A stretch of DNA of 39,687 bases, taken from Octopus sinensis (Eukaryota). A program made the translations under genes and the position numbers. The number at the start of each line of letters is the position of its first letter. Position 1 is the first letter of the stretch. The stretch spans positions 1-39,687 of the forward strand of contig NW_021826265.1 in the NCBI RefSeq assembly GCF_006345805.1. Direction: 5' to 3'. Positions 16,816 to 19,693 of the stretch are shown here, in pieces. The notes under the pieces were generated by a model that saw nothing but the letters and a program-made list of their open reading frames with translations, was not told where the DNA came from and ran no database searches.

Positions 16816-17371
16816 ATAGACCGACTGATAGATAAATATATTAGAATTATAAAAAGAATAGTATGATCACAACGCTGAGAGAAATTATGGAAGCAAGTTG
16901 TACTTGTTTAAACGCTCAGAAAAAGAGCAAAATCTTTTGAGGTTACGTACTTCTATTTCAGGCAATGGCGAAAGAAACAAATAGAGAGAAAAAATGGAGT
17001 GAGAAGACAAACATGCCCGGATGAACGGTTCCACATGTTCATATACGTATATTTCGGGAAAATTAGACAAAGTAGAAAATGCTAAAATAATTTTATCATG
17101 AAGAACATTTTAGTACCGGTTCCAGCCTTTTCGGCTTTTAAAGCAAGAAAAGCAATTAAATTGAGGACAAACTAACTGTAATGTTTCGTTTTAAAATCTC
17201 GATAGTCTTCAAACAGGTAGATTTTCCGTTTTTCTGTCTCTCTCTCTCTTTTACTTATGTGATGCCTTGGTAGATGGTGGTATCTTCTACTTTGTCTTAT
17301 ACAAATTAACTCGTGTGTTCCTTTTCAACCTTCTACACACACACACACACACACATATATATATTATATAT

Positions 17372-17406
<35 letters not shown>

Positions 17407-17559
17407 CCTTTCAGTGAGAATGTTTATGTTAAGCAGTGTTGAGTTTTACAATTCTGTAAATAATTATAATTGTATATTTGCATAAGCTTAAAACTTATAG
17501 CTAAGGAAAAAAGTCTAATAATGGGGTATATGAGCCCTCGACAGAAAAAGTAGGCTTTC

Positions 17560-17633
17560 TCGTACGCGTGGAAATCGAAACCACATCCCTTTGTTAAAGT
17601 GGTTAAGTGTGTTACCGATTACACCATCGAACC
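17560..17633 (-). ncRNA. tRNA-like Pol III cassette (left arm; not a functional tRNA)
   Basis: Minus strand: GGTTCGA-TG-GTGT AATCGGTA ACAC (perfect D arm) ... GTGGT TTCGATT TCCAC-GCGTACGA, then TTTTT at 17549-45. The anticodon arm is degenerate. Confidence 0.6.
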
Positions 17634-17745
17634 AGTCTGATGACACCGCTTAACAAAACCCTTCTTACTGAAAATATATAAAGTTTGTTTATAAAAACAC
17701 CTACGAACTAATATAATTCTCATATTTGATAAAAGGGAGCTGACA

Positions 17746-17819
17746 GGTTTGCTGGTGTAATCGGTAACAAACTTAGTCGCGTTAACACAAGGATGTGGAT
17801 TCGAGTCCCACGCGTACGA
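17746..17819 (+). ncRNA. tRNA-like Pol III cassette (right arm; not a functional tRNA)
   Basis: GGTTTGC-TG-GTGT AATCGGTA ACAA ... GTTAAC ... GTGGA TTCGAGT CCCAC-GCGTACGA, then TTTTT at 17830-34. The anticodon arm is degenerate. Confidence 0.6.
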
Positions 17820-17892
17820 GAAAACCTACTTTTTCTATCGAGGGCTTATATTTCCCATCATTTGCTATAAGCCTTAAGCTTATAAAAATACC

Positions 17893-17930
<38 letters not shown>

Positions 17931-18083
17931 CCGGCCGTTTGTGTATGTGTCTAACTGTATGTATGTGCCAGCGGGGTGGCGTCATTTGAAGGCTAAAACA
18001 ATACGAAACGCATTGTGACCAGCGATGTGTTGCTAGATCTGATGGTCTGGTCGGTCACGGTGATGTATATATATAATAATGAT

Positions 18084-18135
<52 letters not shown>

Positions 18136-19693
18136 GTTAATATACATATACATATCGTCAATGTGTGATATATCCGTAAAAGAACAGCAGTATAAAGCGA
18201 AGAGCAGTAATGCATTTATATGTTGAGTGCATGTCCGCATCCATATATGTATTTCACTGCAAAGCATTCACTGATATCTAGCAATTATATCCAAAAAATG
18301 TTCATCATACCGTGATTATACTGGAGCGTGATACCAAGTTAAGCATTAATTTACTATATTTTTGAATATCCTCGATAATGTTTTAAGTCTACAGCACGTA
18401 ACGCTATTTGCTGGGCATCAGACAGCGATGACTTCGCTGGTATTTCTTTTTAACTCTAAGGGAACTAGCATAGATGGGAGCAAAACAACTCGTGGTATTC
18501 GGAATGTATCGGTATGTATTTATGTTTCTTTACACACCCATGTCACTATATGATTAAATGACATCAATGCTGCCGGTTATATAAGGGTAGATGCTGATGG
18601 GTAGATGTCACCGAACAAACGCAGCAGTTGAGAAGGCTTTTGTGATGTATTATCTTAGCTCTCAAGTTGTTGGCAGCCATGCTATCACTAGTTGATCTGC
18701 AGGGCATGAGGGTGAGCTATGGTTTACTTGGATAAGGCTAATACATAGCTCTCGGCTGCACAGAGTTAATTTAGTTATTGTGTCTCTTTACATTCCAACT
18801 GACACGCACAACAGCGCATGCGTAAATTTATCAATCTCTCTCTATTAATCAATGGCTTTGTGTGTTTGTACATATATATATATATATATATATTACATAT
18901 ATACATATATATATACATACATATATATATACATATATGTATACACACACACACACACAAATATATATATAATATATATATTGTATATATATATATGTAT
19001 ATATATCTAAGTATATATATATATATATGTATATGTATATATACAAATATATATATATATATACATATATATATACATTCATATATTTATATATAATATA
19101 TATATATATATATATACATATACATTCATACATATATATGAATTAACAGATTGATAGAGAGAGAGAGAGAGAGAGATGGGTGCCTGCGTGTATATGTGTG
19201 TTTGTGTATGTGTGTGTGTGTGTATAGCACTCGCGTATGTGTACGTTTTGTATATCTGTGTGTCTTTGTACATATGTATACATTGTACATTTTTATGCAC
19301 AGCAACAAATATGTGTCTCCCTGTATGCGTCTGTATCCATGTCTGTTCGTATATGATACTGCATGCATATTTGAATTTCCATACCTATACATATTTACAT
19401 CATTATATAATATAACACATATGCAAACTTATATATATAATATATATATATAGCACACTAATATACATACTTGCGTGTGATGTTATATATTCATGCGCAT
19501 GTTGCGCATTAATTATACGTACATACATATATACATATACTATATATATATATTATATATATATATATATATACATTTATAAATACATATATATATGCAA
19601 ATGTATATATGTGTGTATATATATGTATGTATATTTATGCATATTTATATGTATGTATATTTATACAGGAAAAGCAGAGTTAAAGAGACGAGT

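What the first reader, a model, noticed from the sequence alone, without database searches (positions are those of the whole stretch)
17472..17892. Foldback built from two outward-facing tRNA-like Pol III units, each with its own terminator
Each arm contains a 74-nt cloverleaf-like cassette (D arm GTGT-AATCGGTA-ACAC, T loop TTCGA(G/T)T, partial acceptor stem) followed 11 nt later by TTTTT, then about 60 bp more inverted repeat. The D loop and GTTAAC are reminiscent of tRNA-Asn(GUU), but the anticodon arms are decayed and differ between arms. This sequence occurs nowhere else in the window, so two independent head-to-head SINE insertions seem unlikely. It could be an undescribed SINE/MITE hybrid that emits two ~90-nt Pol III RNAs, or a paired TFIIIC-site insulator about 2.4 kb from the candidate promoter.
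Basis: partly seen in the sequence, partly recalled or inferred. Interest (0 to 1): 0.75.

Follow-up and report, generated by a model that had tools for sequence, protein, structure and literature searches.

The report
Inverted pair of old retroelement copies
The "foldback" is two decayed, 5'-truncated copies of an abundant 316-bp repeat that carries a tRNA pseudogene. They are joined head to head inside a (TA)n microsatellite, in the pattern typical of Penelope-like retroelement insertions, so this is an ordinary transposon relic and not a purpose-built pair of Pol III genes.

Summary
The inverted repeat is real: it folds at -114 kcal/mol, z = -19 against shuffles. Each arm holds a tRNA-shaped segment followed by T5.

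Each arm is a copy of an interspersed family with at least 2,600 candidate places in a 2.72-Gb genome. The family unit is 316 bp. Its consensus is called a tRNA by ARAGORN, and it has canonical A and B boxes and a T6 about 8 nt downstream. Neither window arm is detected as a tRNA, and both have lost the invariant G53 of the B box.

Typical copies have:
- a variably 5'-truncated upstream partial unit plus one full unit;
- a fixed 3' end that abuts (TA)n.

Of 45 insertions, 30 are single-orientation, 15 are head-to-head with different junctions, and none is tail-to-tail. With the count is 20 to 0. Both arms of a pair always belong to the same subfamily (8 of 8, p = 0.002).

Partial tandem, an adjacent inverted 5'-truncated copy and a (TA)n target together make the published signature of Penelope-like element (PLE) insertion. 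PLE enzymes prime on both DNA strands. Canonical PLEs that end in (TA)n are abundant in this genome.

Across copies the A and B boxes are no better conserved than their flanks, and CpG sites are heavily decayed. No autonomous partner with matching sequence was found.

The parts
17355..17407 (.). (TA)n microsatellite flanking the 3' end of the left copy, preceded by (CA)n from about 17335. Presumed half of the target microsatellite.
   Evidence: Read. Across the family, canonical 3' ends are followed by (TA)n in most copies.
17408..17639 (-). Left copy of the 316-bp family unit, positions 311 down to 61. It is 5'-truncated at the junction, its canonical 3' end faces outward, and it is 82% identical to the consensus.
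   Evidence: blastn of the consensus against the window. Alignment with L015 and L006 shows homology left of 17472.
17558..17634 (-). Decayed tRNA-like segment of the left copy. The A box is intact at 17615-17626. The B-box region at 17570-17582 reads GGTTTCGATTTCC, with G53 and two further positions changed.
   Evidence: Not detected by ARAGORN or Rfam.
17545..17549 (-). T5 on the - strand, about 8 nt after the left tRNA-like segment (T6 in the consensus).
17640..17641 (.). Two unassigned bases (AT) at the head-to-head junction. The CTGATGA at 17635-17641 is created by this junction and is not in the consensus.
   Evidence: No hammerhead hit.
17642..17679 (+). Upstream partial unit of the right copy (unit positions 279-316).
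   Evidence: 87.5% over 32 nt.
17680..17894 (+). Main unit of the right copy, from unit position 1 to about 253, with internal deletions after about 199. It ends ...AAAAATACCAT next to (TA)n, the shorter of the family's two classes of 3' end.
   Evidence: 86% over 1-199.
17746..17821 (+). Decayed tRNA-like segment of the right copy. The A box is intact at 17753-17764. The B box at 17797-17808 reads GGATTCGAGTCC (G53 changed to A).
   Evidence: Not detected by ARAGORN or Rfam.
17830..17834 (+). T5 about 8 nt after the right tRNA-like segment.
17895..17932 (.). (TA)n followed by (TG)n, flanking the 3' end of the right copy. Presumed other half of the target microsatellite.
   Evidence: I17.

Best explanation
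What is there. The foldback is one old insertion of a short non-autonomous retroelement family. The family unit is 316 bp: a 66-nt leader, a tRNA gene-like segment with A and B boxes, a T6, about 160 nt more, and the 3' end ...GCACCGAAAGCATAT. The window holds a 5'-truncated inverted copy (17408-17639, - strand) abutting the 5' end of a 'partial unit + main unit' copy (17642-17894, + strand). Both 3' ends face outward into a (TA)n microsatellite.

How it arose (inferred). This is the insertion architecture of Penelope-like elements (PLEs). A multimeric RNA is reverse-transcribed from nicks in an AT-rich target. Because the enzyme primes on both DNA strands, two cDNAs grow towards each other and are joined at arbitrary 5'-truncated points. 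That gives a head-to-head pair whose arms share the element's 3' end. The tRNA-like part with its own terminator is a captured tRNA gene, flank included. It rides inside the unit and does not drive the unit's mobility.

What it does now (inferred). The window copy is a neutral, decayed relic.

Shown versus inferred. Shown: family membership, the architecture, the orientation bias, the subfamily concordance and the decay. Inferred: mobilisation by a PLE enzyme, origin in a single event, and the present lack of Pol III or TFIIIC function.
For: Family and unit:
- Genome search finds at least 1146 to 2637 candidate places, with copies 75-95% identical to the consensus.
- The consensus is periodic at about 315 bp.

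Architecture in 45 mapped insertions:
- 5' ends are scattered over unit positions 81-297.
- 36 of 51 full units are preceded in tandem by a partial unit.
- 3' ends cluster at 304-316 and at 250-257, and most are followed by (TA)n.

Orientation:
- 15 head-to-head, 0 tail-to-tail. The head-to-head junctions abut or lie within about 60 bp, and each is different.
- Five more head-to-head and no tail-to-tail pairs appear. Binomial p is about 2e-6 for 20 to 0.
- The bias is not caused by the two-armed query. Six of 17 insertions first found with a one-unit consensus query are head-to-head.

Single origin of the arms:
- Both arms belong to the same subfamily in 8 of 8 pairs (permutation p = 0.002). 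Three of those pairs are in minor subfamilies (p = 0.009).
- Both window arms share the rare variant GCGTACGAG.

Literature:
[quoted passage not shown] Short non-autonomous PLE elements that form pLTRs exist (PMC8557442).
- A purified PLE protein cleaves and extends both strands of an AT-rich target and uses multimeric RNA (PMC11167929).

PLEs in this genome:
- At least 4846 first-look GIY-YIG hits.
- The dominant family encodes RVT_1 followed by a C-terminal GIY-YIG domain.
- It ends in (TA)n, with an optional extension of about 40 bp.

Decay:
- CpG sites are 0.73 conserved against 0.92 for other sites, and the B box is among the least conserved windows.
- ARAGORN of 56 units a tRNA.
Against: - No sequence similarity links the 316-bp unit to the 30 PLE loci sampled or to the 3' 300 nt of the dominant PLE family (Smith-Waterman score 20 against 21.3 +/- 2.6 for shuffles). 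The link to PLEs therefore rests on architecture alone.
- No hammerhead ribozyme was found. Naiad-type PLEs also lack one.
- Target-site duplications cannot be read inside (TA)n.
- The two arms are not each other's closest relatives (ranks 20 and 2 of 58). Their distance of 0.18 is close to the sum of their distances to the consensus (0.09 + 0.13). That fits a star-like burst, but it also fits two separate insertions.
- The arms carry different indels and different classes of 3' end.
- The sample is about 45-80 places out of thousands, chosen by similarity. No more genome sequence could be fetched.
- The two classes of 3' end lie about 60 bp apart, more than the 30-40 bp of the classical PLE tail.
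Confidence: 0.6

Rival explanations
1. Two independent insertions of the same family landed in opposite orientations in one (TA)n hot spot, each 5'-truncated.
For: The family clearly prefers (TA)n. The window arms are not nearest relatives and their distances are additive. They differ in indels and in class of 3' end.
Against: Independent hits should give tail-to-tail pairs as often as head-to-head pairs, but the count is 20 to 0. The 5' ends mostly abut within 0-25 bp, which would need the second insertion to land exactly at the first one's truncated end. Arms are concordant for subfamily in 8 of 8 pairs.
Confidence: 0.13
2. A tRNA-derived SINE mobilised by a LINE, with the inversion produced by L1-style twin priming.
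For: tRNA-derived segment, variable 5' truncation, a fixed 3' end next to a simple repeat, and head-to-head geometry.
Against: The tRNA part is not at the 5' end (it starts at unit position 67, and copies extend upstream into a preceding unit). A T6 follows it, so a Pol III transcript would stop after about 90 nt. LINE and SINE insertions do not form partial tandems, yet 36 of 51 units here are preceded by one. In twin priming the inverted piece is internal sequence without the element's own 3' end, whereas 23 of 30 arms here carry the canonical 3' end (read by me from the maps).
Confidence: 0.08
3. A foldback-type or MITE-type DNA transposon whose outward-facing ends are its terminal inverted repeats. 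Single copies would then be broken halves.
For: The outer ends are conserved and the inner junction is variable, as in Drosophila FB elements (from my own knowledge). The hairpin is strong.
Against: Two thirds of insertions are single-orientation and have no terminal inverted repeat. The arms are unequal and every junction is different. No fixed target-site duplication is visible. The partial tandem upstream of full units is left unexplained.
Confidence: 0.05
4. One reading: a functional pair of divergent Pol III units, or a paired TFIIIC (ETC-like) insulator, retained because of that function.
For: The family consensus has canonical A and B boxes at normal spacing and a T6 terminator. Both window arms keep an intact A box and a T5.
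Against: Both arms have lost G53 of the B box. Neither arm is detected as a tRNA. Across the family, A and B boxes are no better conserved than their flanks and CpG sites are decayed. The architecture is a recurrent by-product with variable junctions.
Confidence: 0.05
5. An inverted duplication formed at the DNA level after a single copy had inserted (palindrome formation by template switching during replication or repair).
For: The flanking microsatellites are themselves inverted: (CA)n(TA)n on the left and (TA)n(TG)n on the right, 30 nt at 100% complementarity (I17). The arms share a subfamily and a rare variant.
Against: The same head-to-head form recurs at about a third of loci, which points to the insertion process and not to sporadic rearrangement. 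After the (TA)n, TG and CA occur about 6 to 6 across the family, so the inverted flanks may be chance. No homology extends beyond the microsatellites.
Confidence: 0.06

Closest known systems
Penelope-like element (PLE) insertion architecture: pseudo-LTR plus an adjacent inverted 5'-truncated copy. Includes short non-autonomous PLE derivatives such as MRC1 of Chlamydomonas and the 'short nonautonomous Penelope elements' of butterflies (PMC8557442, PMC11167929, PMC6685494).
   Same: Strong 5' truncation. A partial tandem upstream of a full unit. An inverted 5'-truncated copy directly at the 5' end. AT-rich or (TA)n targets that hide target-site duplications. Two classes of 3' end, with the extension often on one side only. 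PLEs with RT and GIY-YIG domains that end in (TA)n are abundant in the same genome.
   Different: No sequence similarity to any sampled autonomous PLE. No hammerhead ribozyme. The unit carries a tRNA gene-like segment with its own terminator, which I did not find described for PLE-associated elements in the papers I searched.
Animal non-LTR retrozymes: tandem repeats of 170-400 nt that carry a hammerhead ribozyme and are regarded as non-autonomous PLE derivatives (PMC7229834; bioRxiv 10.64898/2026.07.22.740005).
   Same: Short non-coding unit of similar size, head-to-tail multimers, and a presumed dependence on PLEs.
   Different: The defining hammerhead ribozyme is absent. Copies here are mostly 1.1-1.8 units long and not long arrays.
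tRNA-derived SINEs (SINE2), including the octopus OK, OR1 and OR2 families (Ohshima and Okada 1994, cited in PMC10886601).
   Same: A tRNA-derived segment with A and B boxes, high copy number, 5' truncation, and a simple repeat at the 3' end.
   Different: The tRNA part is internal and not at the 5' end. A T6 terminator follows it directly. Copies form partial tandems and head-to-head pairs.
Helenus, Ajax and Cassandra ('TRIMp3'): miniature LTR retrotransposons with a tRNA or 5S gene-like Pol III unit in each LTR (PMC10886601).
   Same: A small-RNA gene-like unit with promoter and terminator embedded in a short repeated non-autonomous retroelement that also forms tandem arrays. The group is known from molluscs (bivalves).
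   Different: There are no defined LTR ends (5' ends scatter over more than 200 positions). No TGG primer-binding site follows the repeat, and there is no polypurine tract and no 5-bp target-site duplication. The 3' end lies in (TA)n.
L1 twin priming (5' inversion). This comparison is from my own knowledge.
   Same: Head-to-head geometry, with an inverted 5' part joined to a direct 3' part at variable points.
   Different: Here the inverted arm carries the element's own canonical 3' end. That fits priming of both strands on the same site of the RNA, as shown for a PLE enzyme, and does not fit internal annealing.

Membership tests
PLE-type insertion (autonomous or non-autonomous) | High degree of 5' truncation with a fixed 3' end | tested here: met
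   5' ends lie at unit positions 81-297. 3' ends cluster at 304-316 and 250-257.
PLE-type insertion (autonomous or non-autonomous) | Partial tandem: a truncated copy directly upstream of a full copy (pseudo-LTR) | tested here: met
   36 of 51 units that start at position 30 or earlier are preceded in tandem by a partial unit. In the window this piece is 17642-17679.
PLE-type insertion (autonomous or non-autonomous) | [quoted passage not shown] | tested here: met
   15 of 45 insertions, with none in the opposite (tail-to-tail) arrangement, plus 5 more. In the window this copy is 17408-17639.
PLE-type insertion (autonomous or non-autonomous) | Insertion bias for microsatellite or AT-rich DNA ((TA)n in Naiads) | tested here: met
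   Most canonical 3' ends, and about half of the 5' ends, abut (TA)n.
PLE-type insertion (autonomous or non-autonomous) | Optional 30-40-bp 'tail' at one end | tested here: inconclusive
   The two classes of 3' end lie about 60 bp apart. In 6 of 15 pairs there is one arm of each class. The size does not match the classical tail.
PLE-type insertion (autonomous or non-autonomous) | For a non-autonomous element: 3' similarity to an autonomous PLE of the same genome | tested here: not met
   No similarity to 30 GIY-YIG loci or to the 3' consensus of the dominant PLE. Only a small sample of the genome's PLE families was seen.
Non-LTR retrozyme | Hammerhead ribozyme in each unit | tested here: not met
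   No hammerhead hit at E <= 10 in the window region or in a near-consensus copy, and none at the gathering threshold in 15 family loci.
tRNA-derived SINE | tRNA-related Pol III promoter at the 5' end of the element | tested here: not met
   The tRNA-like part occupies unit positions 66-142. Copies extend upstream through the leader into a preceding unit.
tRNA-derived SINE | No internal Pol III terminator, so that the transcript spans the element | tested here: not met
   A T6 at unit positions 151-156, conserved at 0.97, lies about 160 nt before the 3' end.
tRNA-derived SINE | 3' part shared with a partner LINE, and variable-length target-site duplications | not testable with these tools
   No LINE library or whole-genome scan was available, and target-site duplications are hidden in (TA)n.
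MITE or foldback DNA transposon | Terminal inverted repeats in the transposing unit and a fixed-length target-site duplication | tested here: not met
   30 of 45 insertions have a single orientation without terminal inverted repeats. Junctions and arm lengths differ in every pair.
Helenus / TRIMp3 | Defined LTRs (TG...CA), a primer-binding site (TGG...) after the 5' LTR, a polypurine tract, and a 5-bp target-site duplication | tested here: not met
   The start of the repeat is not fixed. The sequence after the repeat is AAAGTTTG, with no TGG. The stretch before the repeat is pyrimidine-rich.
Functional tRNA gene | Cloverleaf detected by tRNA finders; intact B box | tested here: not met
   ARAGORN finds 0 tRNAs in the window and Rfam gives no tRNA hit at E <= 10. 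G53 is substituted in both arms. The family consensus does pass ARAGORN.

The most novel reading that the evidence does not exclude
The family could be an undescribed kind of PLE-dependent non-autonomous retroelement in which a complete tRNA gene-like module takes the place of the retrozyme hammerhead. The module would have A and B boxes, a cloverleaf and its own terminator. Cutting by RNase P or RNase Z at the tRNA-like fold, or Pol III transcription from it, would then process or seed multimeric transcripts into unit-length and possibly circular templates. In that case the module would be part of the element's life cycle and not a passenger.
Probability: 0.15. Interest if true: 0.6.

Novelty: new member of a known kind. 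Interest (0 to 1): 0.3.

Why it matters
For the scan, this removes a candidate. The locus is a neutral relic, not a regulatory device near the putative promoter.

More generally, it shows that a perfect-looking 'two outward-facing Pol III genes' foldback can be a routine by-product of retroelement insertion that primes on both DNA strands.

The family itself is of modest interest to transposon biologists. It is a short element without a hammerhead ribozyme that carries a tRNA pseudogene and shows the full PLE insertion signature. It comes from a genome whose size (2.72 Gb) matches a published octopus assembly. That match is an inference and the organism was not otherwise identified.

If the link to PLEs holds, the 20 to 0 orientation bias and the subfamily concordance of the arms are genomic evidence for the two-strand priming so far seen only in vitro.

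Tried and rejected
1. Hammerhead ribozyme or retrozyme. CTGATGA at 17635-17641 looked suggestive, but it is created by the junction and is absent from the consensus. Rfam finds no hammerhead.
2. TRIM or Helenus reading (125-bp direct repeats around a 190-bp core). Rejected because the 5' ends are not fixed and there is no primer-binding site or polypurine tract.
3. A polar (TA)n(TG)n tail as part of the element. Rejected because TG and CA follow the (TA)n about equally often.
4. 'Are the two arms sister copies?' The family has a star-like phylogeny, so this test is uninformative. It was replaced by the subfamily-concordance test.
5. Search for an autonomous partner. There is no similarity to 30 GIY-YIG loci or to the dominant PLE's 3' end. 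The supplement with published octopus Naiad consensus sequences is not held.
6. Helitron-type ends (5' TC, 3' CTRR, 3' hairpin) and Tc1/mariner-type TA plus terminal inverted repeats. Neither is present in the consensus ends.
7. tRNA isotype. This stays unresolved.
8. A larger locus sample.

Full report
**1. The observation**

The inverted repeat is real and far beyond chance. The repeat finder gives arms 17517-17637 and 17742-17862 at 84% complementarity. The two halves of 17472-17892 align at 80%. Folded as single-stranded DNA, the stretch reaches -114.4 kcal/mol against -35.7 +/- 4.2 for shuffles, z = -19.

Each is followed about 8 nt later by T5 (17830-17834 on the + strand; 17545-17549 read on the - strand). 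ARAGORN finds no tRNA anywhere in the window. Rfam at E <= 10 gives no tRNA hit in 17000-18400, only long-hairpin 'miRNA' matches that reflect the foldback shape. The sequence occurs nowhere else in the window.

**2. It belongs to a large family**

The window's assembly has 2,719,151,902 bases in 13,516 contigs. The size agrees with the published 2.72-Gb Octopus sinensis assembly, but this is only an inference. In that assembly the 421-bp query finds 1146 first-look candidates and a one-unit consensus finds 2637. Copies are 75-95% identical to the consensus.

Aligning 24 copies with their flanks gives a sequence that is periodic at about 315 bp. I define a 316-bp unit as follows:
- a leader, AAAGTTTGTTTAC...;
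- a tRNA-like segment at positions 66-142;
- T6 at 151-156;
- a palindrome, TATAAGCTTTAAGCTTATA, at about 222-240;
- the 3' end ...ACCATTCGCACCGAAAGCATAT at 316.

ARAGORN calls the consensus a tRNA at default settings. Its A box (TGGTGTAATCGG) and B box (GGGTTCGAGTCC) are canonical. Two genomic copies pass Rfam's tRNA gathering score, at 33.9 and 32.3 bits against a threshold of 29, and a third scores 25.3 bits. Only 1 of 56 units is still called a tRNA by ARAGORN. The isotype is unresolved.

**3. Anatomy of the copies**

I mapped the unit onto 60 loci, which hold 45 distinct insertions.
- The typical insertion is a variably 5'-truncated upstream unit (starting anywhere from position 81 to 297) followed head to tail by a full unit. 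Of 51 full units, 36 have such a partial tandem.
- 3' ends cluster at positions 304-316 (about 33 cases) and 250-257 (about 9). Most are followed by (TA)n.
- About half of the 5' flanks are also TA-rich, so target-site duplications cannot be read.
- After the (TA)n, TG and CA runs occur about equally often, so the compound microsatellite is not part of the element.

Read in this frame, the window holds the following:
- a left copy on the - strand, 17408-17639, covering unit positions 311 down to 61, with its 3' end abutting (TA)n at 17355-17407;
- two unassigned bases;
- a right copy on the + strand made of a partial unit (17642-17679, positions 279-316) and a main unit (17680-17894, positions 1 to about 253), followed by (TA)n(TG)n.

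**4. The head-to-head form recurs but is not a propagated unit**

Of the 45 insertions, 30 have one orientation, 15 contain a (-)(+) head-to-head junction and none contains (+)(-). A further search with only the last 120 nt of the unit adds five new head-to-head places and again no tail-to-tail place. The binomial p for 20 to 0 is about 2e-6.

The bias is not produced by my first, two-armed query. Six of the 17 insertions first found with the one-unit consensus are head-to-head. The junction falls at a different pair of unit positions in every case, and the arms abut or lie within about 60 bp, usually within 0-25 bp. By my reading of the maps, 23 of 30 arms carry a canonical outward-facing 3' end.

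The foldback is therefore a by-product of how the family inserts. It is not a foldback master element that has been copied.

**5. One event or two?**

Pairwise distances do not decide this. The window arms differ by 0.18 and lie 0.09 and 0.13 from the consensus, and neither is the other's nearest relative. In a star-like burst that is expected in either case.

Subfamily markers are more informative. In all 8 pairs where both arms cover the markers, the arms share a subfamily (permutation p = 0.002). Three of these pairs are in minor subfamilies (p = 0.009). The two window arms also share the rare variant GCGTACGAG. Together with the total absence of tail-to-tail pairs and the abutting 5' ends, this favours co-insertion from one template pool.

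**6. Mechanism**

The combination seen here is:
- strong 5' truncation;
- a partial tandem upstream of a full copy;
- a microsatellite target.

That is the published description of Penelope-like element (PLE) insertions, with (TA)n named as the target bias of the Naiad clade. The same paper describes short non-autonomous derivatives that make pseudo-LTRs and head-to-tail multimers (PMC8557442). A purified PLE protein cleaves and extends both strands of an AT-rich target, uses RNA made of several element copies, and starts reverse transcription at defined internal sites, which explains the optional 'tail' (PMC11167929). Priming on both strands predicts what is seen here: two cDNAs growing towards each other, each with the element's 3' end outward, joined at arbitrary truncated 5' ends.

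The genome is rich in PLEs, with at least 4846 first-look GIY-YIG hits. The dominant family encodes RVT_1 followed by a C-terminal GIY-YIG domain. Its copies end ...TTTTTTACAAA followed by (TA)n, and 5 of 12 carry an extra tail of about 40 bp.

The weak point is that the 316-bp unit shows no sequence similarity to these PLE loci or to their 3' consensus. The partner is therefore unidentified, and the PLE link rests on architecture.

**7. What the tRNA-like part is**

It sits in the middle of the unit, in the sense orientation of the presumed RNA intermediate, and is followed about 8 nt later by a T6. That is the layout of a genomic tRNA gene with its 3' flank, not of a SINE head. A Pol III transcript would stop after about 90 nt and could not template the unit. 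I infer a captured tRNA gene riding as a passenger.

Across 59 units, non-CpG conservation is 0.946 for the A box and 0.871 for the B box (rank 272 of 295 windows), against 0.918 overall. CpG sites are down to 0.73. In the window, both A boxes survive, but both B boxes have lost the invariant G53 (GGATTCGAGTCC on the right, GGTTTCGATTTCC on the left).

**8. Alternatives**

- LINE-type twin priming of a SINE. It fails on the internal position of the tRNA part, the internal terminator, the partial tandems, and the fact that the inverted arms carry their own canonical 3' ends.
- A MITE or foldback DNA transposon. It fails because most copies have one orientation and no terminal inverted repeats, and every junction differs.
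- A TRIM or Helenus-type element (PMC10886601). It fails on the undefined repeat ends and the absence of a primer-binding site and polypurine tract.
- A retrozyme. It fails on the absent hammerhead.
- Two independent insertions, or a later DNA-level inverted duplication. Both remain possible for this single locus but do not explain the family-wide pattern.

**9. Verdict**

The functional interpretation is not supported. The locus is an old, decayed, PLE-style inverted-plus-tandem insertion of a tRNA-pseudogene-bearing non-autonomous repeat. The family may be undescribed and is a modestly interesting new member of a known kind. The locus itself is ordinary.

Noticed in passing
family loci; window 17408 versus 17894: The family has two classes of 3' end, at about unit positions 250-257 and 304-316. 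In 6 of 15 head-to-head pairs, the window included, one arm has the long end and the other the short end. This recalls the PLE 'tail' that is present at only one end of an insertion.
   Followed up: partly
L065, L068, L072, L076, L077, L080, L083, L086, L088, L089, L090 (about 1 kb or less downstream of the GIY-YIG match): The dominant canonical PLE family (RVT_1 plus C-terminal GIY-YIG) ends ...CATTTTCGAACTTCATTTTTTACAAA followed by (TA)n. Five of 12 copies carry an extra extension of about 40 bp (TATATACCCACTCGTATACGAGCTAATCTTATTATAAA) before the (TA)n, which is a textbook PLE tail.
   Followed up: partly
L011 about 2111, L019 about 1853, L021 about 1725, L023 about 1800, L068 about 2479: Another abundant repeat, beginning (CAT)n-TTTAACGTCCGTTTTCCATGCTAGCATGGGTTGGACGG, abuts the 3' side of four family copies and of one PLE copy. 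It may be a further element that targets the same AT-rich sites.
   Followed up: no
L008 about 1777, L046 about 1762, L048 about 1781: A repeat ending ...GGCGGTGCTCCAGCATGGCCGCAGTCAAATGACTGAAACAAG(TAAAAGAG)n lies directly against the 5'-truncated end of three family copies. These could be template-switch chimeras, or the two elements may share a target preference.
   Followed up: no
window 17335-17407 versus 17895-17932; also 17889-17946 versus 18082-18139: The foldback's flanks are themselves inverted compound microsatellites: (CA)n(TA)n on the left and (TA)n(TG)n on the right, 30 nt at 100% complementarity. A second such pair encloses 135 bp just downstream. This is probably chance, because TG and CA occur about 6 to 6 after the (TA)n across the family.
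   Followed up: partly
window 17635-17641: CTGATGA, the conserved hammerhead box, sits exactly at the arm junction. It is created by the junction and is not in the family consensus. No hammerhead model matches.
   Followed up: yes
L058 1195-1817; L025 1324-1793: Two tandem units in L058 differ by only 2%, and two in L025 by 8%, although each is 7-12% from the consensus. These are later local duplications, or multi-unit insertions much younger than the bulk of the family.
   Followed up: no
family alignment: There are at least three subfamilies, marked by the D-loop (AATCGGTA, AA-AGGTA or AAT-GGTA), by GTTAAC versus GTAAAC, and by GCGTACGGG versus GCGGATAGG. CpG sites are only 73% conserved against 92% for other sites, which implies germline methylation of these repeats.
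   Followed up: partly
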